Virus record (IMG/VR): IMGVR_UViG_3300012931_000759
Coordinates: 186,001 to 250,000 of that record
Direction: 5' to 3' (one strand)
Length of the DNA stretch: 64,000 nucleotides
The notes below the pieces were generated by a model. It searched no databases. It was not told the origin of the DNA and saw only the letters and a list, made by a program, of their open reading frames with translations. This document shows, piece by piece, positions 2,189 to 56,116 of the stretch (the first letter of the stretch is position 1; each line of letters starts with the position of its first letter). The position numbers and the translations under genes are program-made.

Positions 2189-2206
2189 CTATCAATATTT
2201 TCTCAT
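2189..2206 (+). promoter_or_regulatory. Putative phage late promoter CTATCAAT-N7-CAT
   Basis: CTATCAAT ATTTTCT CAT, intergenic, just upstream of ATG 2213; motif recurs 7 times. Confidence 0.7.
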
Positions 2207-2212
2207 AAAGGC

Positions 2213-2806
2213 ATGGATCGAATCCCCCGCACAGCTTGGTCTACCCAGCGATCGGTCCCCTTCTCTGAAGAAGAGAAGCAGGCCGCGCGCACAGCCATGG
2301 CCAAACTCGGGAACTTTCTCGGGCAGTTGTGGGCCGCCCAGCAGCACAGCGAGCGGCTGATGGACGTCCTCAACAAGGCGCCCGATACGCCGCCCGAACA
2401 GTTGTTTTCGATCCGTCATCTCATCAGGAAGTTCAGGGACGAGGTCCGCCAGCACTTCACGCAGCTAATTCCGGTCTTCTCTGCCGCCATCACGACGCTG
2501 AATCCGTTCGCGAAAGACACGGATACGGCTGCTATACGTGAGAGTCTCATCGACGCTATGCAGCAGCTTTCTGAGGTCATCGAGACCTACATGGAGACTT
2601 TCGAGGATTTTAATGCGCCGGACCAAATTCAGAGGCTAAAGGCTCTGTTCCAGAAGGTCAAGCAACTCTCGCAGAGTATCGAGGCGGTGATCAAGGGCAG
2701 GCTGCGCGACCATTTTGAGAAAAATATCCTGCGCCGCCAGAGGATCAGCGATCTACATAATGGCATCAGGCGCCGCGCGCGCCTGGTCGCCATGTTGGAG
2801 GGTTGA
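2213..2806 (+). CDS. Hypothetical helical head-module protein
   Basis: ORF with ATG at 2213 (MDRIPRTAW...). Confidence 0.7.
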   Translation: MDRIPRTAWSTQRSVPFSEEEKQAARTAMAKLGNFLGQLWAAQQHSERLMDVLNKAPDTPPEQLFSIRHLIRKFRDEVRQHFTQLIPVFSAAITTLNPFAKDTDTAAIRESLIDAMQQLSEVIETYMETFEDFNAPDQIQRLKALFQKVKQLSQSIEAVIKGRLRDHFEKNILRRQRISDLHNGIRRRARLVAMLEG

Positions 2807-2808
2807 AG

Positions 2809-2979
2809 ATGGGTTTTATCAAAAATGCAGATGGCGACCAGACTAATACCATCGAGCACGTTTTCGAAGGTGTGGATGAGGTGTTGGAGGAGATTGCCAG
2901 CCATGCGGCTCCGGACGAGCCCGCCCTCGTTGTGGATATGTCGAGTTTTGAATCTCTAGATAAAAAAGAATCCAACTAA
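2809..2979 (+). CDS. Small acidic protein (56 aa), not in the ORF track
   Basis: GGAGG RBS; MGFIKNADGD...KKESN*; TAATG overlap with next gene. Confidence 0.55.
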   Translation: MGFIKNADGDQTNTIEHVFEGVDEVLEEIASHAAPDEPALVVDMSSFESLDKKESN

Positions 2980-3644
2980 TGGGTTATAAGGATAGGGTCT
3001 GTAGCCGCTACAGTAAAACATACACGCCGCGCGCATCGAATCAGCAATATTGCGCTGACCTAGAATGTAGACGTTGGAACAGGAACCGTATCAACAGACA
3101 AGCGCGTAAACATCCAGAGAAAGAGGTTTGCTGTACCGTTTGTGGCACTGTGTTCTCGACTAGTAGGTGGAAACAGCAGCAATGTTGCGGAAAGGAATGT
3201 CGCAGTTTGTTTATGCGACTTAAGAACAAGGAATATTATGAGCAAGTTTTGAGACTGCGTAATAGTCATCTAAAAAGAGGTTATTCGTATCCGCAGAAAT
3301 ACATTTTCGAAGCAGTTTTCAAGCTGTTTCCAAATCTGGTCTGGCAATACGACGACCGTTCGACATTACGCAATCCGAACACAGGATATCCACTTGAATT
3401 GGATATCTGGTGTCCCGAAAAACGTTTTGCGATAGAATATGATGGGGAACATCATTTCTCCCCGAAACAGTTCGGACAGAAGGGGTTTGACTATGTGCGT
3501 CTCTTAGACGCCACCAAGACTAAGGAATGTGTCGACAAGAATATAGTCCTGTTGCGCATCTCCTGCCGGGATGACTGGCGCAACAAGGAATGGTTAGCTC
3601 AAAAGGTCGGAGAGTGCTTGAATGGCGTTTACCAAGTTTGCTGA
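2979..3644 (+). CDS. Free-standing homing endonuclease (Zn-finger plus Vsr/PD-(D/E)XK-like)
   Basis: CxxC motifs; LELDIWCPEKRFAIEYDGEHHF; low GC; overlaps the protease start. Confidence 0.75.
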   Translation: MGYKDRVCSRYSKTYTPRASNQQYCADLECRRWNRNRINRQARKHPEKEVCCTVCGTVFSTSRWKQQQCCGKECRSLFMRLKNKEYYEQVLRLRNSHLKRGYSYPQKYIFEAVFKLFPNLVWQYDDRSTLRNPNTGYPLELDIWCPEKRFAIEYDGEHHFSPKQFGQKGFDYVRLLDATKTKECVDKNIVLLRISCRDDWRNKEWLAQKVGECLNGVYQVC

Positions 3645-6600
3645 ATCTAGATTCACAGTTGAGGAGATTCATGCTCCCGAGGCGGCGCTGTCGGATTCTG
3701 TAGTATTGGACAGGTTCACTAAATATGCCAAGACTTTAAGGGCTATTGCCCCAAAAGCCAAGGATTTTCTTTACTTCTCCTGTGTGATGCTCCACTCCGA
3801 CACAGCTGCACTGGTTAATCAAGACACAGGAGAACCAATCCTTGGTAAAGATGGAAAACCTGTTACGGCGGAATGGGATATCAATCCGAAAACAGGATCA
3901 TATAAATGGAAATGTTCAGATCATAATATAAAACCTTTCAAAAATAACAACGGAGATATTTTCGTTGAATCTGAATTAAAAAAGGCTTATCGTAAATGGG
4001 TTGAAAAGCCATTGTGCCAGGATCATCAAAGTAACACGGTCGATGGTGTGCGCGGACTGATTTTGGATACTTATTGGGATGATAAGAGAAAACGTGTAAT
4101 AGGTTTGTGCGCCCTTGACCGAAAAAACTATCCCGATCTTGCACGAAAGGTTGAGAGCGGATATGCAACAAATGTATCTATGGGCACTGCCGTGGGTAGG
4201 TCGATTTGCTACGATTGTGGCAATGTGGCTAAAACCGAGGCCGAATACTGTGCCTGCGTGCGTGCCAAGAGGACCTACGGTGAAATCAACATTGATTTAT
4301 CTCCCATTGAATTGAGTCTGGTGGTTACTGGTGCCGATCCTCGTGCTAAGTTGCGCCATATCATCGCGAGCCTTAACGGATACGCGCAGCAGAAACAGGC
4401 TAGGATCGAGGAGCTACAGCGGGCCGGATGCGTAACTCCCGGCGAGCTGGACAGTCTGCGGGCAGAGGTCGAGGGGCTGCGTCGTCAGCTCTACGAGATT
4501 TCTAGGCTCCATGCACAGGCGGCGCTAGATCCGAGCCACGGGGCAGTGCTCCGCAATCTGCTTGAGATTATCAGCAATCCTGCCACTTCCGCCGAGACCA
4601 AAGCGTTAGCCGACAAGCAGATGAAGGAACTGCTGGGCGGCGTCGCCTCTCCGGAGGATCTGGCGAAGATGGAAACGCCCGCGCCTGCACCTACGGCGGC
4701 CGCCGAGGACGGCGACGGCGTGGAGGGGGCAGGGTGCGAACGAGTAGAAGATAAGCCCGAGGGACAGATGGTTTCCGACGTGGAGCCGCCCTACGGGCTC
4801 GCTGGAAACAAGGCCATGACCGGGGGACGAGGAAGGTCGTATTCCGAGGACCCCGAATCCAGTGGACCGCCACCTTGGTCCCTTGACGGGCGGGAAACCC
4901 GTCTTGCCAGCGGAAACCTGGATGCCCAAATCCTGGCAGTCCAGGAGTGGCTAGATTCAATGCAGACGACCCTGCAGAAGATGGCTGCGGACATCCAGGC
5001 GTCAGCAAACAGGACAAACCCGAAGGAGGAGAAGAACATGTCCGATCTGAAGGAGAGGGCTCGCGCCCGTCGCGCGGCGTTCGAGAAGAACGCCTATCAC
5101 CAGGGGGGAGGCGGTGTCAACGAACCGCAGACCTACCCCAAAGAGGAAGCGGACAAGATCCGCAACACCCAGGACAAGCAGATGGTTGGCGAGGGCATGG
5201 AACCCGGCAACGACGGCTTGGCCGGAAGTGATCTAGCTCTGAAGAAGAAACTGCTCCGTGCCGATCTCGAGGAACGCCGCCTGCGTCGGCATGCACTACT
5301 CGCCAAGGGCGAGGAGATCGTCAAGGTCAAGGCGCCGGACGGAACCGACGTGTCCCTCACAAAGGGCGCCGACGGCAAGTGGACGGTCGCCCCAGCTCAG
5401 AAGGACGACGATCCTGGACTCGAGGTGAATGCGTATTTCCAGGGCGGCGGCGGTGTCAACGAACCGCAGACCTACCCCAAAGAGGAAGCGGACAAGATCC
5501 GCAACATCCAGGACAAACAAATGGTCGGTGAAGGGATGGAGCCCGGCAATGATGGCTTGGCCGGAGACGACCTAGCTTTGAAGAAGAAACTGCTCCGTGC
5601 TGAGCTGACCGCCAAGTTCATCAAGGTCTATGCTGGCCAGGACAAGGCCGAAGTCGACCGGAAGCGCAGCCGCTGGGAAGTCTACGCTGGCGGCCAGAAG
5701 CTCTTCGAGGCGACCGGCGAGCAGATCTATGACGAGGGCGATCTTGTCGACGATAACTACTGGAACCATCTGTCCTCTGCGGACTACGGTCGACGCATTA
5801 TGTCCGCCATTCGCCGCGAGGGTTTGGATAAGACCGCATACCTGCTGACCGGCAAGGTCGTGACGGCCCAGGAACCGGCTCTGCCACCTCCAGGTATGCC
5901 GCCCGCCCCGATGGCCTCCCCGGCCGAGGCTCCCAAGCCTCCCGAGGAGGAGCTTAAGAGCGAAGAGAAGCCGGGCGCCGAGTCCGCCAAGAACAGGGTT
6001 GACGAGGCCCTGGCCGATGTCGAGAAAGCCCTCGGCGACTTGAAAGATGTCCTCAAGGAGGAAGGTGAGTCGAAGGAAGGTGGTAAGGAGGAGCTTCCGC
6101 CGATCGAAATTGGCGAGGCTGCTAAGACCGCCTCTGACATCCGCGCCGCTCTCGATGATAGCGGCGACGAGCTAGCCATTCTTTCCGAGGTTCTCGGCAA
6201 GAGGATCGAGGCTGGCATGACGGCCGGAACCGAGATGGACGAGCTGTTGAAACTGGCCGGCGAATCCCTCGAGGCGAGCGCCGAGATCGTCCGCGAGGCC
6301 GCACTCGTGGTCGAGGCTAAGAAGGGCAAAATGCCCGAGGGCCTGAAGAAGGCGCTCGAGAAGAAGGAGAATGGCGGGAAAGACGAGGAGGACGAGGAAA
6401 AGGGCAAAAAGAAGGAGAAGGAGAAAGGCAAAAAGGACAAGAAGGAAGAGAAGGGTGAGAAGAAAGAGAAGGGCAAAAAGGACGAGAAAGAGGAGAAGGG
6501 CGAGGAGAAAGACGAGAAAGAGGAGAAGGAAGAGAAGAAGTCCGAGGCCGAACTCGTTCTGGAGAAGATGCTGAAAGCACGCGCCGCCAAGCGGCGTGAG

Positions 6601-7602
6601 CTTGTCCGCCTAGCTATCGAGGGAGAGAAGGAATCCCACGAGGAGGCGGAGCACGAGGTTACTGAGGAAATGGAGGAAGGCATTGAAGGTCTCGAGGGTC
6701 TGATGGAGGAACTCGAGGGGATTGAGGAGAAGGAATCTGCCGCTCAGTATGCCGACGAGCCTGCCGCACAGTACGCTGAGGAAGAGGACCCTCTAGTGGC
6801 CGAACTCTTGTCCGAGCTGGACAAGGAAGAGGTGCCGGAGGAAGAAACCGACAACATGACTACCATGGCCGGGCGCCGTGCCTGGCGCGAGAAGGTGGCC
6901 GCCGAAGTCGGTTCGAAGTACCAGCTGAAGTTGGATTCCGCGACCGACATGGACACCGACATGGTACCCAAGGCGCATCCGCAGGGTGGGCACACTCTCG
7001 AGGGACTCGACACTAAACCCTCTGACGAGGGTGCCAAATTCGAGGGCATCGATGAGGTCAAGGCCAAGATTATGAAGCAGGTTGAGAGCTTGCCGCCTGT
7101 CCGCGAGGCCGTCGCCAAGGTGGGCGATCTGCTCAAGTCCGGCAAACTCACGGTGGCCGACCTGTCTAACAACGCCAAGCTGAAAGCGTTGGCGGTCGAC
7201 CCCGAGGCCGCCAAGTACTGGAAACAGTATTTTGGCGAGGGCGACCAAGATAGCAAGCAGTTTGGCGCTGACATGTCCAAGGAGTTCGCCCAGAAGAAGG
7301 CGGCCGCTGAGGCTGAGTCCTACAAGTTGAAACTCCGCAGGGCGGTCGATCTGGCGCTCGACATGCAGGACAAGGGTCTTGTTAGCTCAGGCCGCGAGGC
7401 CATGAACAAGCAGGTCGACGACATCATGAAATTCGACGACCAGGCATTCGAGGCCTTTAAGCGCGCAATGTCCCGCACCACCAATGTCGCGAAGGCCGCC
7501 GGGAAAGCTGAACCGGCCCTCCAGGTTGGCATCAGAGAGGAGGCGGAAACTACCAACCTCTCCGACCAGCTAGGACGTCTTTGGGCACCAAAGAAGCGAT
7601 AG
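3622..7602 (+). CDS. Prohead protease fused to a long scaffold-like region
   Basis: NNNGDIF, KPLCQDH, VSMGT, ELSLVVTGADPRA (prohead protease-like); acidic, coiled-coil C-terminal region; position in head module. Confidence 0.75.
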   Translation: MAFTKFAESRFTVEEIHAPEAALSDSVVLDRFTKYAKTLRAIAPKAKDFLYFSCVMLHSDTAALVNQDTGEPILGKDGKPVTAEWDINPKTGSYKWKCSDHNIKPFKNNNGDIFVESELKKAYRKWVEKPLCQDHQSNTVDGVRGLILDTYWDDKRKRVIGLCALDRKNYPDLARKVESGYATNVSMGTAVGRSICYDCGNVAKTEAEYCACVRAKRTYGEINIDLSPIELSLVVTGADPRAKLRHIIASLNGYAQQKQARIEELQRAGCVTPGELDSLRAEVEGLRRQLYEISRLHAQAALDPSHGAVLRNLLEIISNPATSAETKALADKQMKELLGGVASPEDLAKMETPAPAPTAAAEDGDGVEGAGCERVEDKPEGQMVSDVEPPYGLAGNKAMTGGRGRSYSEDPESSGPPPWSLDGRETRLASGNLDAQILAVQEWLDSMQTTLQKMAADIQASANRTNPKEEKNMSDLKERARARRAAFEKNAYHQGGGGVNEPQTYPKEEADKIRNTQDKQMVGEGMEPGNDGLAGSDLALKKKLLRADLEERRLRRHALLAKGEEIVKVKAPDGTDVSLTKGADGKWTVAPAQKDDDPGLEVNAYFQGGGGVNEPQTYPKEEADKIRNIQDKQMVGEGMEPGNDGLAGDDLALKKKLLRAELTAKFIKVYAGQDKAEVDRKRSRWEVYAGGQKLFEATGEQIYDEGDLVDDNYWNHLSSADYGRRIMSAIRREGLDKTAYLLTGKVVTAQEPALPPPGMPPAPMASPAEAPKPPEEELKSEEKPGAESAKNRVDEALADVEKALGDLKDVLKEEGESKEGGKEELPPIEIGEAAKTASDIRAALDDSGDELAILSEVLGKRIEAGMTAGTEMDELLKLAGESLEASAEIVREAALVVEAKKGKMPEGLKKALEKKENGGKDEEDEEKGKKKEKEKGKKDKKEEKGEKKEKGKKDEKEEKGEEKDEKEEKEEKKSEAELVLEKMLKARAAKRRELVRLAIEGEKESHEEAEHEVTEEMEEGIEGLEGLMEELEGIEEKESAAQYADEPAAQYAEEEDPLVAELLSELDKEEVPEEETDNMTTMAGRRAWREKVAAEVGSKYQLKLDSATDMDTDMVPKAHPQGGHTLEGLDTKPSDEGAKFEGIDEVKAKIMKQVESLPPVREAVAKVGDLLKSGKLTVADLSNNAKLKALAVDPEAAKYWKQYFGEGDQDSKQFGADMSKEFAQKKAAAEAESYKLKLRRAVDLALDMQDKGLVSSGREAMNKQVDDIMKFDDQAFEAFKRAMSRTTNVAKAAGKAEPALQVGIREEAETTNLSDQLGRLWAPKKR
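5089..5601 (+). repeat. Two ~174-bp (58-aa) direct repeats, 5089-5262 and 5428-5601
   Basis: NAY(H/F)QGGGGVNEPQTYPKEEADKIRN.QDKQMVGEGMEPGNDGLAG.DLALKKKLLRA twice. Confidence 0.95.
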
Positions 7603-7608
7603 GACCTT

Positions 7609-7641
7609 GGCGCCTGGAGCCAACAACTCCAGGCGCCTTTT
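7609..7641 (+). terminator. Rho-independent terminator
   Basis: GGCGCCTGGAG/CTCCAGGCGCC stem followed by TTTT. Confidence 0.7.
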
Positions 7642-7659
7642 CCTTAAACAGGATCCAAC

Positions 7660-7830
7660 ATGCCGGAAAAGGGAAAGTCGCTCCGCGAGGAGCTCGAGGC
7701 GGAGTTTGCCGACCTCAGGGAGTTGGGTGTGACGGAGGAGGAGCTGGAAGCCCTGTATGAGCAGTGCGGGCTGAAGCCGCGGCGCGTCTTGGTGCTGAAC
7801 ACCGGGCGCGCCCAGGCGCACCCGAAGTAG
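7660..7830 (+). CDS. Small hypothetical protein (56 aa), not in the ORF track
   Basis: AGGA RBS; MPEKGKSLREELEAEF...AHPK*; fills the gap between genes. Confidence 0.6.
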   Translation: MPEKGKSLREELEAEFADLRELGVTEEELEALYEQCGLKPRRVLVLNTGRAQAHPK

Positions 7831-7838
7831 GAGACACC

Positions 7839-8099: not shown

Positions 8100-8112
8100 G
8101 AGGATACGGGAG

Positions 8113-8904: not shown

Positions 8905-8925
8905 TACATAGACTGGAGACCGGGC

Positions 8926-9618
8926 ATGTTGAGATTGGTCCAAATTGGCAACGCGCTTCCTTTATCATATCCGGTTGATTCTACTTCTGTTTTTGAACCA
9001 GGGATGATTGCGCAGTTAAAGCTTGCTGGCCAGGATATTGTGGCCGGCTTGTCCGACGGGACGGCGCCGCTGGGGATCATCGACGATGTCAGATCGACGG
9101 CGTTCACGCGCCCGTCTATCGACGAGACTGTGGTCATCAAGTGTACGGGCATCCTAGATGCGTACGGACGCTACATCAGCACGGCGGACGCAAAACAGGA
9201 GCTGCTCAACCCTAATGTGGTACCGGCAAGCTTCGTGGCCGACTATGAGAACCTGGTCCTGAATCCGGTCAACGGCATCCTGATGGCTCCGGCTGGAAGC
9301 GTGCTCAATTTCGACCTAGACGGGGACGGGAAGCCGGACAGTATCAGGACGGTCGTTAACTATGTGTACACAATTCCCGACCTGCCGGGCGAGGACACCA
9401 CGGTCGGTAGCAACAGGATGACGATCTGGTTTACTCGCGGCGTGTACATTACGGACAAGTTCGACACGACGCAGAAGTATCCGCTCAATGCGGCCTTGTT
9501 TGTGAACGAAGAGGGGCTGCTGACTACAAAACAGGCGACGCCAAACCACCCCGCCGTGGCAATGATAAGTGGCCCACCCAGTGCGATGTTAAATAATCTT
9601 GAACTGCTATGGCTTTGA
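8926..9618 (+). CDS. Putative head decoration/structural protein
   Basis: Beta-rich; weak similarity to 16366..17037 (MLRLVQ/MALRILQ; RMTIW..GVY / KVTAW..GLY). Confidence 0.55.
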   Translation: MLRLVQIGNALPLSYPVDSTSVFEPGMIAQLKLAGQDIVAGLSDGTAPLGIIDDVRSTAFTRPSIDETVVIKCTGILDAYGRYISTADAKQELLNPNVVPASFVADYENLVLNPVNGILMAPAGSVLNFDLDGDGKPDSIRTVVNYVYTIPDLPGEDTTVGSNRMTIWFTRGVYITDKFDTTQKYPLNAALFVNEEGLLTTKQATPNHPAVAMISGPPSAMLNNLELLWL

Positions 9619-9626
9619 TATTATTA

Positions 9627-10199: not shown

Positions 10200-10200
10200 G

Positions 10201-13851: not shown

Positions 13852-13853
13852 TC

Positions 13854-16259: not shown

Positions 16260-16277
16260 CTATCAATAATTTCGCAT
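16260..16277 (+). promoter_or_regulatory. Putative phage late promoter for the capsid operon
   Basis: CTATCAAT AATTTCG CAT, preceded by palindrome TTTTTCCGGAAAAA (16245-16258). Confidence 0.7.
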
Positions 16278-16365: not shown

Positions 16366-17037
16366 ATGGCTCTCAGGATTCTTCAGCCGGGCATCCAGCC
16401 GCTCGGACAGTTCGATTTCGCAGACGGTTACCTGCTTAGCGTTAAGGGCGGCGAGGTTTGTACCCTTGTGGCTCTGTCGCGCACAAACACCGCTTCCGAA
16501 AAGGCGGCTGCGGACGCGCTCGATGGCTACACCAACTACTCTCAAAACATGCGCGCTGGCCTGACCCTTAACATCGCAGTCAACACGGCCCGCCCGCTGT
16601 GGCTGACTGATGACGGCACCGGCGCCTCTGGCATCATCCAGGGGTACGGCACGCTGTTCGGCCAGGTGATCGGCACCCCTGTCGGTCTTACGACCTCGGG
16701 AACCAACCTCGGTCCCCACACCGCCCTTGCCTCTGGCAAAGTGACCGCGTGGGACAAGCCGGGCCTCTACGCTGTGACGCTCGACGCTGTCGACACTGAC
16801 GCGACGAACGGCCTTCAGCCAAGCAACGTGGCCATGGTGCCGCAGAAGGCGATCTACCCGACGATCCTCGGTGTTCTGACCCCGACGGCCGGACGTTCGG
16901 TCGGCGCTGCTGGCCCCACGGTCGCCCGTTTCGTGGAGTTTGAATCCACCGCCCGCTCTCTCGTCCGCACGCCTGCCTCGCTCGTGGGCGCGACTCCGGT
17001 CTGGGAGCACGCCGTGATTTCGTACTTTGTCGAGTAG
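16366..17037 (+). CDS. Head decoration/cement protein
   Basis: Immediately upstream of the major capsid gene, strong RBS, biased codon use; 2 DGY. Confidence 0.65.
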   Translation: MALRILQPGIQPLGQFDFADGYLLSVKGGEVCTLVALSRTNTASEKAAADALDGYTNYSQNMRAGLTLNIAVNTARPLWLTDDGTGASGIIQGYGTLFGQVIGTPVGLTTSGTNLGPHTALASGKVTAWDKPGLYAVTLDAVDTDATNGLQPSNVAMVPQKAIYPTILGVLTPTAGRSVGAAGPTVARFVEFESTARSLVRTPASLVGATPVWEHAVISYFVE

Positions 17038-18172: not shown

Positions 18173-18203
18173 CGCCAACCGGCAACTAACTGAATCGTGA
18201 ATG

Positions 18204-18238
18204 AAAAAATCGGGCTGCTTCGGCAGCCCGATTTTTTT
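18204..18238. terminator. Bidirectional rho-independent terminator
   Basis: AAAAAATCGGGCTGC-TTCG-GCAGCCCGATTTTTTT. Confidence 0.92.
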
Positions 18239-18255
18239 GTGCCTGTTCTTTTCTC

Positions 18256-18284
18256 TTGACAAGGCTTAGCAAGATAAATAAACT
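18256..18284 (+). promoter_or_regulatory. Sigma70-type promoter
   Basis: TTGACA-N17-TAAACT upstream of 18325. Confidence 0.65.
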
Positions 18285-18324: not shown

Positions 18325-19911
18325 ATGAGAACGAGGGAAAAAATCGATGACGCCATTCTGGCGGAGGACATCAGGAGCCTCTCGGAAAAGATCGGCAGAG
18401 TGCCGAGGCAGGAAGATTACAAGAAGGACGGAACCTTCGGCTTGAACACTCTGCTGCTCCGGAAGTCTTGGAACCAATGGCTGACGGAGATTTTTGGTCA
18501 GATCAATGAGGTTCGCAAAACCAAGCGAGAGAGGGCAACTGCTCTGGAGGTTTTGCTGGATATCAAATGCGTGTGTGACAAGTTGGGCAAACCTCCAACG
18601 CAGGCGGAGTACAAAGTGGCAGGCAAACACCCTTTGGGAACCATACTGCGGCACCGGAAATGGAACGATTGGTTGAAATTGGCCACTGGTTCCGTGAACT
18701 ACAACCGCACGGAGGACAGCAAAACCAGGAGGATAGGCGACCAGGATCTTGCCGATGATGTGCGGCGGGTGGCGACGGAACTGGGGCACGCCCCGACTCG
18801 GAGCGAATACAACGAGCATGGTCGCCATTCCTCCGACACCATTGTGGTTAGGATGCCTTGGATGGAATTCATCCAGAAGGTTTGTGGGCTTGAGCCATCA
18901 AAAATTGCGTCCGTCAACAGGTCGAAGGCGACCAACGAGGAACTGCTGGCCCAGTTGAAAAGATTGGCGACGACTTTAGATCGAACGCCCCTGAAGGAAG
19001 ATCTGGGTGGTCAAAACGGATTCTGCTACACCGCATATGTTCGTGCCTTTGGCACTTTCGGCAATGCCCTTGTTGCCGCTGGATTGATCAATCCCCTGAA
19101 CCGCTATTGTGTTCCTCGCGAGGAACTGGTTGTCGAACTGAAGCGGGTGTATGGTCTGCTCGGCCACACGCCGTCCGAAACGGAGTTCCTGGAAAACAGC
19201 CCCATACGCAGCAATGGTTCGATATATTCCGAGTTCGGCTCCTGGACAAAGGCGTTCCTTGCTGCAGGTATTCCAGTTATAAAGGCCAGAAATATCTCCG
19301 TGGACGACATCAAGATCGCCTTGCAGAAATGGCATACTGCCAACAATGGCGACGATTCCTGCCTCGAATACTGGAAAATAAGAAAAGCAAAGAAAAACAA
19401 ACAGTTTCCATATTCGCCAAACTCCGTCAGCGCGAAGTTCCATCCACTATCCTGGGAAGAGATTATGCGCGAATGCGGATTCCCAAACTATGTAACCAAG
19501 GATCGTTATGTTACAGGGCGTAAACGCGGCGACCACACCGGAGCCGACGGCAACGAGTACCTATCCTCCCTGGAGAAGGAGATTGGCGATTTCCTGTTCG
19601 AATTGAAGGGCTCGGGAAATATCCTGGACTACGAATATGAGGCCAAAATATGCCCCGACAAGAACTGGACATGCGACTTCAAGGTGACGATGCGCGATGG
19701 CAGGGCTGTCTGGCTGGAGGCCGACGGCCTCCGCAACAACCGCAACCGACCCTACTCCTCGGGCAACAACGAAAAGATCGCATTCTATGGCAACAACGGA
19801 ATGGATTGTCGCATAGTGTCGTATTCCTCTCCCAATATCCGATGGGCGGTGGCCGACAGCCTAGCCTTGCCATTGCCGGTCCCCACCAATCCGCGAAAGG
19901 AAAACTTATGA
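18325..19911 (+). CDS. Protein with ~6 homing-endonuclease-associated helical repeats and a C-terminal PD-(D/E)XK nuclease
   Basis: Repeated L..V...LG..P...EY...FG.W..AL units; SSLEKEI...YEYE...TCDF...WLEADG. Confidence 0.75.
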   Translation: MRTREKIDDAILAEDIRSLSEKIGRVPRQEDYKKDGTFGLNTLLLRKSWNQWLTEIFGQINEVRKTKRERATALEVLLDIKCVCDKLGKPPTQAEYKVAGKHPLGTILRHRKWNDWLKLATGSVNYNRTEDSKTRRIGDQDLADDVRRVATELGHAPTRSEYNEHGRHSSDTIVVRMPWMEFIQKVCGLEPSKIASVNRSKATNEELLAQLKRLATTLDRTPLKEDLGGQNGFCYTAYVRAFGTFGNALVAAGLINPLNRYCVPREELVVELKRVYGLLGHTPSETEFLENSPIRSNGSIYSEFGSWTKAFLAAGIPVIKARNISVDDIKIALQKWHTANNGDDSCLEYWKIRKAKKNKQFPYSPNSVSAKFHPLSWEEIMRECGFPNYVTKDRYVTGRKRGDHTGADGNEYLSSLEKEIGDFLFELKGSGNILDYEYEAKICPDKNWTCDFKVTMRDGRAVWLEADGLRNNRNRPYSSGNNEKIAFYGNNGMDCRIVSYSSPNIRWAVADSLALPLPVPTNPRKENL

Positions 19912-22725: not shown

Positions 22726-22743
22726 CTATCAATAATCCATAAT
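22726..22743 (+). promoter_or_regulatory. Putative phage late promoter (variant)
   Basis: CTATCAAT AATCCAT AAT. Confidence 0.6.
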
Positions 22744-22747
22744 TTTT

Positions 22748-22875
22748 GTCGGACACCAGCCGATGCGCCAATATGGCCGCAAGGGCGTGGCGGTCGGCCA
22801 ATCCAGACTGACCGGCAAGATGGGAAACTGAGCTAGACACTAGGCGGACCGCTCGTGAGGGCGGTCCGCTTTTTT
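22748..22875 (+). ncRNA. Candidate ~125-nt small RNA
   Basis: Lies between a promoter motif and a terminator; GCCGA...TCGGC stem; no convincing ORF. Confidence 0.45.
22844..22875 (+). terminator. Rho-independent terminator
   Basis: GCGGACCGCTC-GTGA-GGGCGGTCCGC-TTTTTT. Confidence 0.85.
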
Positions 22876-22923
22876 GATGATCCTGTCTAGCAGCGTCGCT
22901 GATAGCGGAAAGATGTCGCGAAT

Positions 22924-22941
22924 CTATCAATTTTCCAGCAT
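22924..22941 (+). promoter_or_regulatory. Putative phage late promoter
   Basis: CTATCAAT TTTCCAG CAT, 30 nt upstream of ATG 22971. Confidence 0.7.
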
Positions 22942-22970: not shown

Positions 22971-23246
22971 ATGAGTCGCTACAACTATTTCGGTACCATC
23001 CTGATCGACGGTTACGCGTTCCCGGAGATTCCGCAGGCCGTTTTCGATTTCAATTCTCAAGGGTTCAAATTCCTGAACCGCGGCGCGTATCCCATCGAGT
23101 ATAGTTTTGATGGAACTCATCTTCATGGTGATCTGAATCCAGCCGATGCCTCCAAGGAAATGTCGTTCGATGGGCGTTGTGAGTGTAAGGTGTTTTTCCG
23201 AGCCAAAGATGGTTACGGCATTTGTAGGGTGGAAGCCTGGAGATAG
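22971..23246 (+). CDS. Small beta-rich putative virion protein
   Basis: GGAGG RBS; 2 DGY. Confidence 0.7.
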   Translation: MSRYNYFGTILIDGYAFPEIPQAVFDFNSQGFKFLNRGAYPIEYSFDGTHLHGDLNPADASKEMSFDGRCECKVFFRAKDGYGICRVEAWR

Positions 23247-23249
23247 ACG

Positions 23250-23969
23250 ATGGCCAGTGGAGTCTACGCCATAACGAACACTGTGAGCCTGAAAAGGTAC
23301 ATAGGTAGTTCGGACAATATAGATCAGCGATGGCGCCAACACAGACGAAAGTTGCGGAAAAATGGGCATTCTAAACCCCATCTTCAGGCTGCCTGGAACA
23401 AATACGGCGAACGGACCTTCAGGTTTGAAGTTTTGTGCTTGACTGATCAACCTTGCCAAGTAGAGCAGGCATTTTTGACAGTCTGGAAACCCGAATACAA
23501 TATTTCGGTGGGCGCCGATGCGTGGGCGAACCTTTACTGTGGAGCATCGGGCCAAATTGGGGCATCTCGCAGGGGATGTGTCCATTCCATAGAAGCCAAA
23601 GTAAAGATGTCGGCTTCTCACAAAGGAAAAAACTTGTCTGCCGAAACGCGTGCCAAGATTTCTTCGGCAAACAAAGGAAAAGTTCGTTCAGAAGAACAGC
23701 GTGCGAACATAAGCAAATCCAAAAAAGGTAAGCCTTCACTTTTCAAGGGCCAAACCCTTTTTGACGAGACGCGTGCCAAAATTTCGGCAGACAAGATAGG
23801 CAAGCCTGGTCATCCGCACACGGAAGAACATCGCGCCTCCATGTACAGGGACAACAATTCATCCAAACGTGCCGATGTCCACGCCAAGATCAACACAGCA
23901 CAGAAGGCTGCTTGGGCTCGTCGTAAAGCGGCACAAGGGAATGCGAATACTCTGGAGACGAAAACATGA
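23250..23969 (+). CDS. GIY-YIG homing endonuclease with NUMOD3 repeats
   Basis: GVYAITN...YIGSS; PEYN; repeated ETRAKIS...KGK. Confidence 0.9.
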   Translation: MASGVYAITNTVSLKRYIGSSDNIDQRWRQHRRKLRKNGHSKPHLQAAWNKYGERTFRFEVLCLTDQPCQVEQAFLTVWKPEYNISVGADAWANLYCGASGQIGASRRGCVHSIEAKVKMSASHKGKNLSAETRAKISSANKGKVRSEEQRANISKSKKGKPSLFKGQTLFDETRAKISADKIGKPGHPHTEEHRASMYRDNNSSKRADVHAKINTAQKAAWARRKAAQGNANTLETKT

Positions 23970-35838: not shown

Positions 35839-35856
35839 CTATCAATAACGAAGCAT
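35839..35856 (+). promoter_or_regulatory. Putative phage late promoter
   Basis: CTATCAAT AACGAAG CAT, intergenic. Confidence 0.7.
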
Positions 35857-35962
35857 TAAATTGGAATATGAGCCGGTGCGATCACCGGTTGTGTTTTGCT
35901 TTCAATGGAAGGCAGTTGGCATTCCAGTCTTTGGTTCATGTTTAGTTAAAGGGAGTCGGCAG

Positions 35963-41260: not shown

Positions 41261-41273
41261 GCTTAGGAGCACC

Positions 41274-47275: not shown

Positions 47276-47278
47276 GAG

Positions 47279-47635: not shown

Positions 47636-47671
47636 TAGCGTCGCCGGTTTGTCGTTCCTGAAGGGGTTAAT

Positions 47672-49335: not shown

Positions 49336-52300
49336 TGTCCAACTCGAAATACCCCAATGGCCTCGACACCGATGCCGAGTTGCCGCGAGTAGATGATGCG
49401 ATCACAGAAATCGGAGGTTTGGCTATCGACAGCCTCCGATCCGCCGTCTTCGCGATCGAGAAGGCTCTCGGCGTGAAACCGCAGGGAACGGCCGCCGACC
49501 TTGCCGGTCGGCTTGGCATGTCCCTCGACGCCAACGGCCACATCAAAGCCTCCGCCCTCTCGGGCATAGGGCTGGTGACCCTTCCGATCACTAATACACA
49601 GGTCGGCTCGGCCGCCGGCATCGAGGAGTCCAAACTCGACCTGAATTACGGCACTACCCTGCTCAAATCGTGGATCGATAGTCTCAGGGTTCGTGTGGAC
49701 GCGTTGGAGGTGACAGTTGCGACCACCATCGCACACTTTGCTGCGCATGTTACCAGTCCGTCGGTCTGGGGGCGGCACAGGACCAGCGACATCGATGCCT
49801 ATGATGTCTTCGCGGGTATGAACGCCCAAGGTGCCCTGACCAACCTCGACACGAGATTGAAGGCTCATATTGCGGATCTTGTCGACGCCCACGACGGCAG
49901 CGCAATCTCCCTCGACGCCAGTCGCTTTTCCTCGATCACTGCAACCGATGTCCAGTCGGGCGCCGAGCAGCTCGAAGCTCTACAATTGGTGGAAATCGTC
50001 CGTCACCGCGACCGGCATCACGGAAATGGGATACTTGGAACACAGGACGCCTTCCTGGCCGGAACCAGCCACGGCGAGGTGCTCATTGCCGCCTCGGCGA
50101 CAACCGCCGCCTCGATCGGGAATGGCTTCATCAAGTTCGCAGTGGCGCCCAGCGCGCCCGCCTTCCAATCTATCTCGAAAAACGACCGAATCGATTTCGT
50201 GAGCGCCGGAGGGAAAACCTACACTTTTGTCATTAGTGGCACACAGAGTACGAACCAGGTCAATATCTTCGGCTCTATGCCTGTGTCCGGGGTTGGAACC
50301 GCAACGGTGTACAAGACTGCCGAAGAGACCTTGGAGCCCTCCGTGGCTATGGTCTGTATGCGCCAGGATACACTGTCGCCGCGGCCGTCTACTCTACAGA
50401 TTGTCCACCCGTCCTCCCCCTTCATCATGAGTTCAGGCTTTCGCGGAAGCGACCTTTCGGCATCGGCTGCGAACATCCGACTGCTGTACCCCAACCAAGA
50501 CGGAAGTGGGGATACCGGCAACCTGGATGTGTACGCCGCCATGGCTGCGTTCTCGGCCGTCAAAAGCACCTGGACTGTCGAGAACATCGCCAGGACGATC
50601 AATTCTCAGCTATTCTCACCGGGCATCGGATTACCAAGATATCCGTTGGTTGCGTTTGCCTACAAGGGTGAACTTACCTTTGCCTTTGACGCGCCCGGCG
50701 CCGACGGCTATGTCGAGATCGGTGTGCCTACCGCTAACGATGCCACGAGCACTCTCGGATTTGTGTCCGGCACGAAAGAATATGCGCGTTCTTCGCGCGA
50801 TCTCTATATCGATGGATATGAGATCACTTCGGTCTCTAAACTTTTGGACGCTTACGGCCAGATTACGGCCTCCGATACAATCACCTTTACGTCCGTTAAT
50901 CTGCTCGCACTCGGCGTTAAATCGGGGCATTTGGCAAGAATCACACCATATCACAAGGGCACATATGTCATAAGTGACGTCACATCAAGCACAATTGTCT
51001 TCGACAGCGCGAACGAGCACGACTTCACCAGTTCGCCCAGCGCGCTGAACAAGCAGATCAGAGTTATAGTATATGCGGACGCCTTCTCCGTCAGCACAAC
51101 TCCTACCCAACACACATTGTACGAGGTTTTCCTCGACGGCTATGACGACGGGTATGGACCAGTGGCTGGGCTCAAGGCCTCGCCAAGAGTTGGGTATTTC
51201 GACACACCTGCTGCCCCAGGATCAGCGCTCAAAGATATCTTGGATGTGAAAGCTGTATCTCGCACTTTTGGAACGGCTTCCAGGCGTGTGTTTTTTGACT
51301 ACTCCGCGCGAACGATGGTTCTCGGCAACCCGATCACCGGCCCTTCCATCTTAAGCCTAGGTGCCAAGGTTACAATGCCTTCCTCAAGTGGAGAGGGATT
51401 TAGGTTCACCCTATATGATACCAACGGCGTGGATTACTTGGAACTTGAAGTGGCAAGTGGCCTCCCTGGCAGCGATGGTTACATGGACGTTTCCGTGTAT
51501 TCCCGTATCAGCGAGGAGCGTTTCCTACAAGTTGCAACCGTCCTACATGACGGGACCGCGTTCCAACACCTCGACGACAATAGGCAGTTCGGGAACGTAG
51601 GACGCCAGGACGTCCGTGATGATTTTACCCGCGACTACGTGTCTTATCCGCGCTCCCTACTGCGCGGCAATGGGGTCATCTACGGTTTTGTGGTCACCGG
51701 CAATGGAACGGGGACTTTGGCCGTCACGGGCGGTCAATGCTTGGTTGATGGTCAACTCAAATCCGTCGGCAAGACTTCGTTCACTATTCCTCTCGACGGG
51801 GCCACGGTGAACTATAACTTGTTCATGGACAGGGATGGCGTTCTGCGACTCATGCGGGACGACTATTTTGCCTCAGGCGTCTTGTCCACGCCTTCCACAG
51901 CTGAGTTGCTGACTAGCAGAACCGAGACCATGCTTGCCAAGGTGGAGGTAAGTGTCGCAAACACCATTACCACCATCATCGATCTCCGAAGGTTTGTTAA
52001 CGATATTGATAGTAAACTCGACCTGTTAGTTGAGGAAAACAGCATCACCCATGGCTCTTTCGCCAGCCTGAAGGCCGCCACGGACTATCTGAATAGTCTA
52101 CCATCCTCGACCGCCTGCTCCAGACGCATCAGGGTGCGCGGAGAGGTTTTCCTGTCCGAGAGCATCAGTATACCGAGGAACACGGAACTTGTGGGCGATG
52201 GGTACGGATCGGGCGGAACCTCGAATCGCAGCGCGCGCATTACATACTTGACCACCAACGCTGCTATACAAGGTAATGACGGCCTGGTCATCAGGGATTT

Positions 52301-53906: not shown

Positions 53907-53915
53907 GAAAAAGAC

Positions 53916-54413
53916 ATGGCAGATAAAACTGGAATCCAGATGATCGAGGAACTTCTCGCTGGTATGGCGGTTCTGGATCGCCGCGTCCAGGTCGTGGAGC
54001 AACTCCTAAAGCAGCTGTTGGCCACAGCGAATTCAGGCCCGCCTTGCGCGGTCCCTGGCGTGGAACTCAACGGGCACCCAGCCAAGTCGCCGGGTGCCGA
54101 TCCACCGGCCGGGCAGCCTCCTAGCATAGAGGGGATCGTCCCGGAGCCGCTGATCAAGGCGGCTCCGAACGCAAGGGTGGTTGGCAGGGTCATGGAGGAG
54201 GGGAAACCCGTCCCCGAGGTGAATGTGACAATCCATGACGATAGGAACAATGCTATCAAGAAAACACGGACCAACCGCTCAGGCGAGTGGATGGCGCAAT
54301 TGCCGCCGGGTAAGTATGCTGCAGAGTGTTTTTTGGATGGGCGGGTGAACGGCAACGTGGTTTTCAATGTCGGGCAGGGCGACAGGATCGTGCGGGTCGG
54401 ACAGCCCCAATAA
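53916..54413 (+). CDS. Protein with carboxypeptidase-regulatory-like (prealbumin-fold) domain
   Basis: V.GRV...GKPVP.V.V.I...T...GEW...LPPGKY. Confidence 0.6.
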   Translation: MADKTGIQMIEELLAGMAVLDRRVQVVEQLLKQLLATANSGPPCAVPGVELNGHPAKSPGADPPAGQPPSIEGIVPEPLIKAAPNARVVGRVMEEGKPVPEVNVTIHDDRNNAIKKTRTNRSGEWMAQLPPGKYAAECFLDGRVNGNVVFNVGQGDRIVRVGQPQ

Positions 54414-54431
54414 GCACAACGGGAAACTGAG

Positions 54432-55190
54432 ATGAGCACTTCGCACAGGACTTATAGCGACCTTTTTGAACTGGCTAATTTCGTTAAACAAACGGCGGTA
54501 GGGCAGGGCAAAAACCTGCTTATCGACTCGTTGCGTGAGCATTTCCGGCAAGACACGATCTACCGGTATAGCACGGACGCTTTCGGATTTCCCCTCACAC
54601 CCGACCTAACCGATCTGCCCCCGGAGATTAGCGAGACCAGAACTACTCGCATGTTTATCGGGGACATCTTCAGGTATGACAAGCGGTACCTTCCCTCGAT
54701 CACCGTCCGCCAGACCAGCGGTCGCTACTACGCCATCAGCTTCAATCAGGAGGGTACAACGCGCTACCGCGTAGACCTGGTGGTCGACGGATACGGCAAC
54801 CGATCATTGGTGAAGGTGCCAACCCACAAGGTGTTCGCCGGGGGATGGGATCAGACATTCGAGGTGCTGATCGCCGCAGAGAGCACACTGGATCGTGAGG
54901 AGTTGTCCGATATTGTCTCCTCGTATCTCATAGGAGTGGCCAGACAACCCCTGCTGGATGCCGGGCTTTTCATCAGGACGGTTTCGTATGGTGGGGAAAG
55001 GGAGGAAGATTGGGCGAATGACAAGATCTACATACAGCCTATCACGGTAGAGACTTTCTCAGAATGGAAGCGAGAAATTCCGCTAGATAGTGTCGTGGAG
55101 ACGATCAACTTTTGCTTCGAGTTCGGGATACTGGGCAGCGGCCGGTTCGACACTGTGGTCACCTTGGTCGATGCGCATAGCGCGTCCTAG
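54432..55190 (+). CDS. Putative tail completion/terminator protein
   Basis: Upstream of sheath; LPSITV, I.AES..DREELSD pattern; 1 DGY. Confidence 0.55.
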   Translation: MSTSHRTYSDLFELANFVKQTAVGQGKNLLIDSLREHFRQDTIYRYSTDAFGFPLTPDLTDLPPEISETRTTRMFIGDIFRYDKRYLPSITVRQTSGRYYAISFNQEGTTRYRVDLVVDGYGNRSLVKVPTHKVFAGGWDQTFEVLIAAESTLDREELSDIVSSYLIGVARQPLLDAGLFIRTVSYGGEREEDWANDKIYIQPITVETFSEWKREIPLDSVVETINFCFEFGILGSGRFDTVVTLVDAHSAS

Positions 55191-55682
55191 TCGCGCGCCC
55201 ACTCTCGTAGGGCACCACAGTTCCGGCATAGCATTTCGTGCCCCTCGAGCATCGCCCGCAGGTTGTCCCAGGACATATTCTTCACCTTACTGATTGGGAA
55301 CACCTGGTCATTCTTGTGGAATTCGAACACCGGTGCGGGGAACGGCTGGCTACAGTCAGCACATACGCCTCCCTTCAATGCTACGGCTTTCTCAATTTTC
55401 TCTTCGAATTTCAGGTTCTTAATCTCATCGCTACAGGTTTTACAGTAGCTGAGGGGTTTTAAACCGCCTTTCCGGCTATGGAACTCGCAACGATCCTTGT
55501 GCTTCTGGCAGCGCGCACAAAAAGCTTTGCCTGGCTCGACTTCCACAATATATGTACGGCGGTTGTGTTGCCCCAACGGCGAGCAGACCGGACAGAAGCA
55601 CCGGCTTGCCAAGTTCCAAATGCGCCCGTCGACCTCTACCTGTATCGGAAACTCTTCTCCGCAATTCCTACATTTTGGCATA
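55187..55682 (-). CDS. Cys-rich HNH-like endonuclease
   Basis: KGGVCADC...FEFH...MLCRNC; start MPKCRNCG. Confidence 0.6.
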
Positions 55683-56015
55683 TGTCGCTCCCTTCTTGAG
55701 ATTGTCCTTGGCCTGGAGCCATTGGTGGTTTTCGGGCGCGAAGGCCAAACTGATCTGCGACGCATCCGTCAGATCGAAACTGGACAGTCTGTGGCACATC
55801 TGGCATTCCTGCCTAGGTTTCGTTTTTGCGTGGCATGAGGAGCAGACCGGTCCGGCATCGGTACGTGTCTCAACGATTTGCTTTTGACCGCAAAAGACAC
55901 ATATCTCTTTGATTCTTCTTATGTATTCCTGATGTTTATAATATTGATCACACAGTTGTAATTTCTGCGAGAACAGGACAGCGACCTTGTGTTCACAACC
56001 GACACACATGGACAT
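55668..56015 (-). pseudogene. Internally deleted HNH endonuclease
   Basis: CxxC N-terminus joined directly to FDLTDASQISLAFAPENHQWL (compare 25354); lacks the DH catalytic motif. Confidence 0.55.
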
Positions 56016-56037
56016 TGAGCACCTCCTGCTTGCTCTG

Positions 56038-56055
56038 ATGCTGATTAATTGATAG
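56038..56055 (-). promoter_or_regulatory. Putative phage late promoter, minus strand
   Basis: Reverse complement reads CTATCAAT TAATCAG CAT, upstream of AGGAGGT RBS of 56015. Confidence 0.7.
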
Positions 56056-56098
56056 AAAACAGATTATCTTTCAAATCCACAGACTATCTCCTCGCAAT

Positions 56099-56116
56099 CT
56101 ATCAATAAACATGTAT
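56099..56116 (+). promoter_or_regulatory. Putative phage late promoter for the tail operon
   Basis: CTATCAAT AAACATG TAT. Confidence 0.65.

What the first reader, a model, noticed from the sequence alone, without database searches (positions are those of the whole stretch)
2189..56116. Phage-specific promoter motif CTATCAAT-N7-(C/A/T)AT in seven intergenic copies
Seen at 2189, 16260, 22726, 22924, 35839, 56099 (+) and 56055 (-), with fixed spacing. Each points toward the downstream gene; the single minus-strand copy precedes the only minus-strand genes. It is unlike sigma70 and T4 late (TATAAATA) promoters. Inference: a late promoter read by a phage-encoded sigma factor or RNA polymerase, with the distal AT at or near the start site.
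Basis: partly seen in the sequence, partly recalled or inferred. Interest (0 to 1): 0.62.

Follow-up and report, generated by a model that had tools for sequence, protein, structure and literature searches.

The report
Conserved phage-specific promoter in huge phages
The repeated CTATCAAT-N7-CAT motif is real and behaves like the main phage-specific promoter of an uncultured family of huge wetland phages, probably read by host RNA polymerase carrying a phage-encoded sigma factor, but no transcript start has been mapped.

Summary
The window has 7 copies of CTATCAAT-N7-HAT (0.03 expected), all intergenic and all pointing at the next gene.

The window is part of a 340-kb phage record with 18 exact and 9 one-mismatch intergenic copies. 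CTATCAAT is that genome's most enriched intergenic 8-mer.

The motif is conserved upstream of orthologous genes in related huge phages with 31-55 % GC (Fisher p = 2e-13 against the complete 442-kb relative). In the tail-sheath upstream region, only the two divergent motifs and the ribosome-binding site stay conserved.

There is no -35 element. The full element is AAAT-CTATCAAT-AWT-N3-GCAT-WA.

I found no phage RNA polymerase, but there are two conserved phage sigma factors. I favour the RpoD/RpoS-like one, "sigma A". Its operon has a conserved TTGAAT-N17-TATAAT host-type promoter, whereas the sigma B gene lies downstream of a motif copy.

"Late" is not established. The motif heads the tail sheath and other virion genes, but also dNMP kinase, thioredoxin, PhoH and at least 8 homing-endonuclease genes.

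No RNA data exist, so start sites and the sigma assignment are inferences.

The parts
2189..2206 (+). Motif copy CTATCAATATTTTCTCAT. An ATG follows 6 nt later, starting a 197-aa gene (2213-2806) that leads a run of virion-module genes.
   Evidence: The orthologues in G001, G003 and G004 also carry the motif, as CTATCAAT or CTATTAAT.
16260..16277 (+). Motif copy CTATCAATAATTTCGCAT, followed by a 5' hairpin and then a 223-aa gene (16366-17037).
   Evidence: The G003 orthologue has the motif.
22726..22743 (+). Motif copy CTATCAATAATCCATAAT. About 100 nt downstream lies a strong terminator (22842-22871), so this may be a small non-coding transcript of about 130 nt. This copy is specific to G000.
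   Evidence: No Rfam match.
22842..22871 (+). Intrinsic-terminator-like hairpin (13 pairs plus a T-run) lying between the two motif copies.
22924..22941 (+). Motif copy CTATCAATTTTCCAGCAT, ahead of a 91-aa gene (22971-23246) and a GIY-YIG homing endonuclease (23250-23969).
   Evidence: The orthologues in G001, G003 and G004 all carry the motif.
35839..35856 (+). Motif copy CTATCAATAACGAAGCAT, followed by a terminator-like 5' hairpin (35871-35890) and a tail-fibre-like gene (about 35861/35963-36385).
   Evidence: The G004 orthologue has the motif.
56038..56055 (-). Minus-strand motif copy CTATCAATTAATCAGCAT. It heads the window's only minus-strand genes: a 115-aa ORF (55668-56015) and an HNH-endonuclease-like ORF (55187-55765).
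   Evidence: The divergent copy is conserved in about 12 related contigs.
56099..56116 (+). Motif copy CTATCAATAAACATGTAT, 63 nt upstream of the tail-sheath gene (56180-58708).
   Evidence: It is conserved upstream of sheath orthologues with 63-82 % identity in contigs of 31-55 % GC.
56180..58708 (+). Tail-sheath gene (842 aa). It is the clearest late-type gene under the motif.
   Evidence: PHROG tail-sheath families, E = 5e-19.

Best explanation
The motif is the core promoter of the phage's own post-early transcription class. It is compact and has no -35 element. It consists of a -10-like block, (AAAT)CTATCAAT(A), plus an initiator-like GCAT seven bases downstream, with transcription starting at or within a few bases of that CAT. 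Host core RNA polymerase reads it when carrying a phage-encoded sigma-70-family factor. The likelier reader is 'sigma A' (G000 313923-314567, 214 aa), which has RpoD/RpoS-like regions 2 and 4 and no region 3. Its N-terminal ~40 residues look like sigma region 1.2 by eye (my reading, not a tool result). Sigma A is itself expressed from a conserved host-type TTGAAT-N17-TATAAT promoter. The regulon includes virion genes (tail sheath, tail-fibre-like), nucleotide-metabolism genes, the operon holding the second sigma ('sigma B', G000 133785-134354) and most free-standing homing-endonuclease genes, which depend on it for expression when inserted against the flow of transcription. Shown here: the motif's existence, its intergenic and oriented placement, its conservation at orthologous positions, the lack of a -35 element, and the presence of sigma genes with no phage RNA polymerase. 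Inferred: promoter activity, the start-site position, which sigma reads it, and timing.
For: Chance is excluded in the window and the genome. CTATCAAT is the top intergenic 8-mer in G000 and the only strong intergenic motif shared by four related genomes, apart from tRNA and RBS words. Orientation: G000 has about 353 plus-strand and 9 minus-strand called genes. Seven of the 8 minus-strand intergenic copies sit 6-93 nt upstream of minus-strand ORFs, six of which have HNH or EndoVII PHROG matches. Orthologous conservation: in G000 versus G001 reciprocal best hits, 10 pairs carry the motif in both genomes, 2 and 4 in one only, and 244 in neither (Fisher 2e-13). The same test gives 9e-9 for G003 and 2e-5 for G004. 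Footprint: in 11 sheath upstream regions with mean column identity of 47 %, only the two divergent motifs and the RBS/ATG are conserved. The 44-bp stretch between the divergent motifs is not conserved, which leaves no room for other promoters. The 77-site logo shows no information upstream of -5, then AAAT/CTATCAAT/AWT/nnn/GCAT/WA. Four copies across G000 and G001 have a called ATG 6 nt after the motif, and two further G000 copies (19730-, 123235+) show the same spacing to uncalled ORFs, which places the start site between the 8-mer and position 24. TATCAATA matches T4 late TATAAATA at 7 of 8 bases; the T4 element lies at -13 to -6 (PMC1524935). Two sigma genes are conserved in the complete relative G001 at 61 % and 55 % identity. 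No RNA polymerase was found. For sigma A specifically: its best PDB matches are primary and RpoS sigmas, E = 1e-31. A TTGAAT-N17-TATAAT promoter upstream of its operon is conserved in G000 and G001 while the spacer diverges. Sigma B lies in a conserved operon (motif, dNMP kinase, further genes, Cas4-like nuclease, sigma B) in G000, G001, G003 and G005. Sigma B is ECF-like, a class that, from general knowledge, normally needs a -35 element.
Against: No transcript 5' ends are available. Only DNA runs from wetland metagenomes hold this sequence. Neither sigma has been linked to the motif by any direct or co-variation test. The partial relatives were uninformative, because G002 lacks the whole sigma B region. 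If T2-A3-T4 of the motif align with -12 to -10, the T that should sit at -7 falls at -6, so the fit to group-1 sigma recognition rules is imperfect. Sigma A has a region 4 with no matching -35 element. Several copies are followed by terminator-like hairpins 15-35 nt downstream, which is unusual for a plain promoter. Five exact copies in G001 fall in sequence that my gene caller marks as coding.
Confidence: 0.7

Rival explanations
1. The motif is the same promoter, but it is read by the ECF-like sigma B (possibly auto-amplified from the motif upstream of its own operon), while sigma A serves another class.
For: Sigma B is conserved together with the motif in G001 and G003. A 27 % relative sits in distant G005, which uses the CTATTAAT variant, including at the orthologous dNMP-kinase position. 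Minimal or divergent phage sigmas such as T4 gp55 do read -10-only promoters.
Against: ECF-type sigmas normally need a -35 element, and none exists here. The sigma B gene lies downstream of a motif copy, so another factor must start its expression. No second promoter motif that sigma A could serve was found.
Confidence: 0.17
2. The motif is a host-sigma promoter variant, or the binding site of a phage activator that redirects host sigma-70 holoenzyme (in the manner of T4 MotA or P2 Ogr), rather than the target of a phage sigma.
For: The 8-mer contains a TATAAT-like core (TAT-C-AAT). No experiment ties it to a phage sigma.
Against: There is no -35 element, no TG extension, and no TAnnnT at a suitable distance downstream. 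The motif stays invariant across phages of 31-55 % GC, presumably with different hosts. Canonical sigma-70-type promoters exist elsewhere in the same genomes and look quite different. Sigma-70-like hits in the window are not above chance.
Confidence: 0.07
3. The motif is an oriented operator or 'stoperator'-type repressor site, or an RNA-level processing signal, rather than a promoter.
For: Mycobacteriophage stoperators are also asymmetric, intergenic, multi-copy and oriented with transcription (general knowledge). IMG/VR flags two of the relatives as 'provirus'.
Against: Back-to-back divergent copies lie only 44 bp apart with nothing conserved between them. Isolated antisense homing-endonuclease genes have no other conserved upstream element. 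Some ATG codons begin 6 nt after the motif.
Confidence: 0.04
4. The motif is repeated only because it travels with mobile homing-endonuclease cassettes.
For: At least 8 of the 27 G000 copies precede HNH, EndoVII-like or GIY-YIG genes.
Against: Twelve non-mobile genes, including sheath, dNMP kinase and thioredoxin, keep the motif at orthologous positions across genomes. The endonuclease genes still need a promoter, so this adds to the promoter reading rather than replacing it.
Confidence: 0.02

Closest known systems
T4-type late promoters (TATAAATA at -13 to -6, read by gp55 with gp33 and the gp45 clamp)
   Same: Both are single 8-bp -10-region elements with no -35. The sequences are identical at 7 of 8 positions (TATCAATA against TATAAATA). 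Both are used for structural genes and for free-standing homing-endonuclease genes, and both are read by a phage sigma on host core polymerase.
   Different: This motif has an invariant C at the fourth position, an extra 5' C, and a fixed GCAT initiator 7 nt downstream. There is no clear gp55 orthologue: phrog_234 reaches only E about 2e-3 on the N-terminal half of sigma A, and the control also rings in bacteria. No gp45-like clamp was detected. The candidate sigma carries a region 4. The regulon also includes nucleotide-metabolism genes.
SPO1-type sigma cascade (host sigma, then gp28, then gp33/34)
   Same: The phage encodes two sigma-70-family factors. One lies behind a host-type promoter and the other lies behind the phage-specific promoter.
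   Different: SPO1 middle and late promoters are bipartite, with -35 and -10 elements of different sequence. Only one phage-specific motif class could be found here.
Rak2/CBB-like jumbo phages ('group 2' jumbo phages, which have sigma factors and no RNA polymerase)
   Same: These are jumbo phages without their own RNA polymerase but with an RpoD-like sigma plus a second sigma, and with an ATAAATA-type putative late motif ahead of structural genes (PMC5259590; PMC7824862).
   Different: The consensus differs. No gp23-type capsid was detected by Pfam, although that control search was uninformative. The sheath's nearest isolated relatives are Bacillus SPO1-like and Mycobacterium cluster-C phages at about 25 % identity.
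AR9/phiKZ non-virion RNA polymerase late promoters (short motif, fixed spacer, start dinucleotide)
   Same: The layout is bipartite, with a short upstream motif at a fixed distance from the start-site dinucleotide.
   Different: Those promoters are read by phage multisubunit RNA polymerases. No beta/beta' homologue or DFDGD motif is present here.

Membership tests
T4-type late transcription system | Promoter consisting of TATAAATA at about -13 to -6 with no -35 element | tested here: inconclusive
   There is no -35 element. The sequence matches at 7 of 8 positions, with an invariant C in place of A. Position relative to the start site is unknown.
T4-type late transcription system | A gp55-family sigma | tested here: inconclusive
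   phrog_234 hits the N-terminal half of sigma A at E about 2e-3 in three genomes, but the control also rings in bacteria. hhalign probability is 8.5 %. tblastn gives E = 3.3.
T4-type late transcription system | gp45 sliding clamp acting as activator (with gp33) | tested here: inconclusive
   No match to T4 gp45 or to phrog_223 in five genomes. The control rang nowhere, so absence is not proven. gp33 was not searched.
Sigma-70-family-dependent phage promoter | A phage-encoded sigma with regions 2 and 4, and no phage RNA polymerase | tested here: met
   Searches show the sigmas. Searches show no polymerase.
Sigma-70-family-dependent phage promoter | Transcription starts a few bases downstream of the element and depends on the sigma | not testable with these tools
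   No RNA runs hold this sequence.
Host primary-sigma promoter | TTGACA-N17-TATAAT, or TGnTATAAT | tested here: not met
   The logo has no -35 element and no TG extension. Window sigma-70-like hits are at chance level.
T7-like single-subunit RNA polymerase promoter | A T7-family RNA polymerase gene in the genome | tested here: not met
   No PF00940 match, although that control was uninformative. T7 RNA polymerase tblastn against six related genomes gives E >= 0.57.
phiKZ/AR9-type multisubunit RNA polymerase promoter | Phage beta/beta'-like subunits with a DFDGD motif | tested here: not met
   No PF00562 or PF00623 match, with controls positive. No DFDGD-type catalytic motif in the six-frame translations of G000 and G001.

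The most novel reading that the evidence does not exclude
A previously undescribed family of 300-440-kb environmental phages runs nearly all of its post-early transcription from a single invariant promoter with no -35 element. That promoter is one base away from the T4 late promoter, yet it is read by a truncated RpoD-like sigma (regions 2 and 4, no region 3) with no sliding-clamp co-activator. The sigma sits in a cascade: host-type promoter, then sigma A, then the motif, then sigma B. Homing endonucleases have adopted the same promoter in order to spread against the direction of transcription. If true, this would be an independent or very deeply diverged route to T4-style -10-only late transcription.
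Probability: 0.35. Interest if true: 0.6.

Novelty: new variant of a known kind. Interest (0 to 1): 0.5.

Why it matters
The motif gives a ready-made transcription map of about 27 units for an uncultured huge-phage family. It also provides a compact promoter of about 23 bp paired with a small candidate sigma, which could be tested as an orthogonal expression pair. It links the promoter logic of these phages to the T4 late paradigm while lacking recognisable T4 accessory factors. It also shows how free-standing homing endonucleases, including every antisense gene in the genome, depend on the phage's own promoter class.

Tried and rejected
- **Close isolated relatives:** a megablast of 10 kb of the window against GenBank phages found nothing.
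- **Literature:** a full-text search for CTATCAAT with 'phage' and 'promoter' gave only unrelated primers and sites.
- **RNA evidence:** only two DNA runs from wetland metagenomes hold the sequence, and no RNA run does. I therefore did not use read laying, because contigs cannot show transcript starts.
- **Second promoter class:** k-mer enrichment across four genomes gave only tRNA and RBS words besides the motif.
- **Phage RNA polymerase:** searches with PF00940, PF00562 and PF00623, a DFDGD pattern, and T7 RNA polymerase tblastn were all negative.
- **T4 accessory factors:** gp45 and phrog_223 searches were negative, but the controls were uninformative.
- **Capsid families:** PF07068 and PF05065 gave no match, so I could not check whether the capsid gene carries the motif.
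- **Sigma B relatives in IMG/VR:** a single-sequence search found none. The sigma A search added only distant hits.
- **Sigma assignment from G002:** G002 lacks the entire sigma B neighbourhood, so its lack of sigma B says nothing.
- **Rfam:** the window has no hits, including the possible small RNA at 22743-22871.
- **Alternative readings rejected:** CAT as a -10 element, or CTATCA as a -35 element. The spacings of 9 nt and the base frequencies do not fit.
- **Not performed:** Complex prediction, structure prediction, the protein atlas search and the large homology searches. They could not settle promoter activity or the sigma assignment.
Full report
**1. Observation**

CTATCAAT-N7-HAT occurs 7 times in the window at exactly the reported places. 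Shuffles gave a mean of 0.03 and a maximum of 1. The bare 8-mer occurs 10 times against 1.1 expected. The three copies without the distal AT lie inside ORFs.

The window is bases 186001-250000 of a 340,392-bp IMG/VR virus record, which I call G000. It has 55.7 % GC and CheckV estimates it as 84 % complete. It comes from wetland metagenomes.

G000 holds 18 exact copies, and the reversed-pattern control gave 0. By my own codon-usage gene caller (353 plus-strand and 9 minus-strand genes, 10 % non-coding), all 18 are intergenic, binomial p = 1e-18. Nine further intergenic copies carry one mismatch, and two of them have the CAT one base closer. CTATCAAT is the most enriched intergenic 8-mer in the genome.

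**2. Anatomy**

I built a logo from 77 intergenic copies in four related genomes. It shows no information upstream of position -5, so there is no -35 element. The full element reads A-A-A-T / C-T-A-T-C-A-A-T / A-W-T / n-n-n / G-C-A-T / W-A.

The AT at positions 17-18 is not an artefact of my search pattern. Among intergenic CTATCAAT copies in G000, it is present in 18 of 23 and shifted by one base in 3 more. It is absent from the coding copies.

The distance from the motif to the start codon has a median of 46 nt. In four copies across G000 and G001 the called ATG begins only 6 nt after the motif and there is no Shine-Dalgarno sequence. Two more G000 copies (19730-, 123235+) have the same spacing to ORFs that my gene caller did not call. 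Any transcript start must therefore lie between the 8-mer and about position 24, which is at or near the conserved GCAT.

Several copies are followed by strong 5' hairpins. Some look like terminators: window 35871-35890, G000 about 49360-49390, and window 22842-22871 after the 22726 copy.

**3. What lies downstream**

- **Homing endonucleases.** Seven of the 8 minus-strand copies in G000 sit 6-93 nt upstream of minus-strand ORFs. Six of those ORFs are HNH or EndoVII-like homing endonucleases by PHROG matches. One of them sits inside the tRNA array, where the promoter reads back across tRNA-Val. Plus-strand copies precede another HNH gene and a GIY-YIG gene.
- **Virion genes.** Copies head the tail sheath (window 56180-58708), a tail-fibre-like gene (window about 35861), and the first gene of a run of virion genes (window 2213).
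- **Metabolic and other genes.** Copies also head dNMP kinase, a thioredoxin-like gene, PhoH and several unknown genes.
- **Spread.** Motif copies are scattered through the structural region of about 150-285 kb (terminase at 162 kb, baseplate at 262 kb) and also through the replication and metabolism regions.

The class is therefore not restricted to classic late genes.

**4. Conservation**

A tail-sheath search of IMG/VR returned 21 related loci. In those with 63-82 % sheath identity and 31-55 % GC, the motif is present 60-125 nt upstream of the sheath gene. In nearly all of them a second, divergent copy lies 45-60 bp further upstream.

In an 11-sequence alignment with mean column identity of 47 %, the only conserved islands are the two motifs and the RBS/ATG. 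The 57-58 % lineage uses CTATTAAT.

The complete 441,904-bp relative G001 has 25 exact copies. G003 has 7, G004 has 6 and G002 has 6. Reversed-pattern controls gave 0-1.

Among reciprocal-best-hit gene pairs, the motif upstream of a G000 gene strongly predicts the motif upstream of its orthologue:
- G001: 10 both, 2 and 4 in one only, 244 neither; Fisher p = 2e-13.
- G003: Fisher p = 9e-9.
- G004: Fisher p = 2e-5.

The distant G005 (33 % GC) shows tCTATTAATATT enriched between genes, without a fixed CAT. One such copy sits at the orthologous dNMP-kinase position.

This amounts to a phylogenetic footprint of a functional, strand-specific, gene-proximal element. The 44 bp between the back-to-back copies are not conserved, so the motifs themselves are the only candidates for the divergent promoters.

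**5. Who reads it**

I found no phage RNA polymerase:
- PF00562 and PF00623 gave no match, with positive controls.
- No DFDGD catalytic motif appears in the six-frame translations of G000 or G001.
- No T7-like enzyme was found by Pfam or by tblastn in six genomes.

There are two sigma-70-family genes.

- **Sigma A** (214 aa) has regions 2 and 4 and no region 3. Its best matches are primary and RpoS sigmas. By eye, its first ~40 residues resemble sigma region 1.2; no tool tested this. Its N-terminus resembles T4 gp55 only weakly.
- **Sigma B** (about 190-206 aa) is a divergent ECF-like sigma with no PHROG family.

Both are conserved in complete G001, at 61 % and 55 % identity.

First, the operon containing sigma A is preceded, in both G000 and G001, by aaaaagt-N-gg-TTGAAT-N17-cgTATAAT-N-tcttt. 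This is a canonical host-type promoter whose hexamers are conserved while the spacer diverges. Second, sigma B lies at the end of a conserved operon that begins with a motif copy (motif, dNMP kinase, further genes, Cas4-like nuclease, sigma B) in G000, G001, G003 and G005.

In addition, ECF-type sigmas normally need a -35 element (general knowledge), and none exists here. The assignment remains an inference, because the partial genomes could not discriminate between the two sigmas.

**6. Comparison with known systems**

In fact TATCAATA (motif positions 2-9; position 9 is A in 53 of 77 copies) differs from TATAAATA at one base, and both elements lack a -35. In T4 the element lies at -13 to -6 (PMC1524935). 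The same register here would place +1 at the G of GCAT, with the A two bases later as an alternative.

Variants such as CTAAATA in phage Aeh1 and ATAAATA in the jumbo phage CBB are already known. 'Group 2' jumbo phages likewise lack an RNA polymerase and carry an RpoD-like sigma plus a minimal sigma (PMC7824862).

Membership in the T4 system is not established. There is no clear gp55 orthologue and no detectable gp45 clamp, gp33 was not tested, and the candidate sigma has a region 4. The two-sigma arrangement resembles the SPO1 cascade in logic, but I found no second phage-specific motif.

**7. Rivals**

- Host sigma, with or without a phage activator: 0.07. There is no -35, TG or TAnnnT signal. 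The motif is invariant across a wide GC range and presumably across hosts, and canonical host-type promoters in the same genomes look different.
- Stoperator-type site or RNA-processing site: 0.04. The divergent back-to-back geometry and the ATG codons 6 nt after the motif argue against it.
- Pure hitch-hiking with mobile endonucleases: 0.02. Twelve non-mobile orthologous positions keep the motif.

**8. Verdict**

The promoter interpretation is well supported by sequence evidence, but no transcript starts have been mapped. A phage sigma, not a phage RNA polymerase, is the likely reader. 'Late' is too narrow a label, and 'unlike T4 late' is incorrect.

I rate the novelty as a new variant of a known kind: a phage-sigma-dependent, -10-only promoter class.

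**Limits**

- Gene calls are from my own simple caller.
- There is no expression data.
- The sigma assignment and the start site are inferred.
- Read laying, complex prediction and structure tools were not used, because they could not address these points.

Noticed in passing
window 22726-22880: A G000-specific extra motif copy is followed by about 100 nt of GC-rich structured sequence and a strong terminator (22842-22871), just upstream of the conserved copy at 22924. It may be a small RNA of about 130 nt. It has no Rfam match and is absent at the orthologous place in G001, G003 and G004.
   Followed up: partly
window 35871-35890; G000 49360-49390 (locus L013 about 9360-9390): Terminator-like hairpins with T-runs lie only 15-35 nt downstream of motif copies, between the promoter and the gene. 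They could be attenuators, 5' stabilisers, or terminators of the upstream gene placed after the next promoter.
   Followed up: partly
G000 306908-306936 (locus L024 about 6908-6936); G001 287344 (-): A canonical TTGAAT-N17-TATAAT promoter with an upstream A-tract heads the operon that contains sigma A. The hexamers are conserved between two genomes while the spacer diverges. It is a likely host-sigma early promoter.
   Followed up: partly
G000 55.8-78 kb (L013 15850-18219; L014 5641-18217): An array of at least 14 tRNA genes is interspersed with homing-endonuclease genes. The promoter of one minus-strand HNH gene (66426-) lies beyond tRNA-Val, so its leader would be antisense to that tRNA.
   Followed up: partly
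G000 109146-113243, 148986-151799, 164195-168451 (L016, L018, L019): Intein and LAGLIDADG insertions sit in GyrB, in a UDP-glucose-dehydrogenase-like gene and in another large gene. Together with at least 8 free-standing HNH, GIY-YIG or EndoVII-like genes, the genome carries an unusually heavy load of selfish endonucleases.
   Followed up: no
window 18201-18284: A very strong terminator (18-pair stem, 18201-18240) is immediately followed by the best sigma-70-like match in the window (TTGACA-N17-TAAACT, 18256-18284), ahead of the gene at 18325-19911. This may be a host-type promoter inside the structural region.
   Followed up: no
window 2207-2215; G000 19730(-), 114969(+), 123235(+); G001 101913(-), 245421(-): Several motif copies are followed by an ATG exactly 6 nt after the T of CAT, with no Shine-Dalgarno sequence. 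This implies leaders of about 8-10 nt, close to leaderless mRNAs.
   Followed up: partly
G001 ends (1-1552 and 441173-441904): The SMC/gp46-like gene of G001 is split across the two ends of the record. The 441,904-bp contig is therefore a circularly closed or permuted complete genome, although IMG/VR labels it 'linear'.
   Followed up: no
window 55187-56015 (-): In G001 and G004 the divergent gene next to the sheath is a single HNH-like ORF of about 165 aa, conserved in position. In G000 the region holds two overlapping ORFs (115 aa and 192 aa), which suggests an insertion or a frameshift.
   Followed up: no
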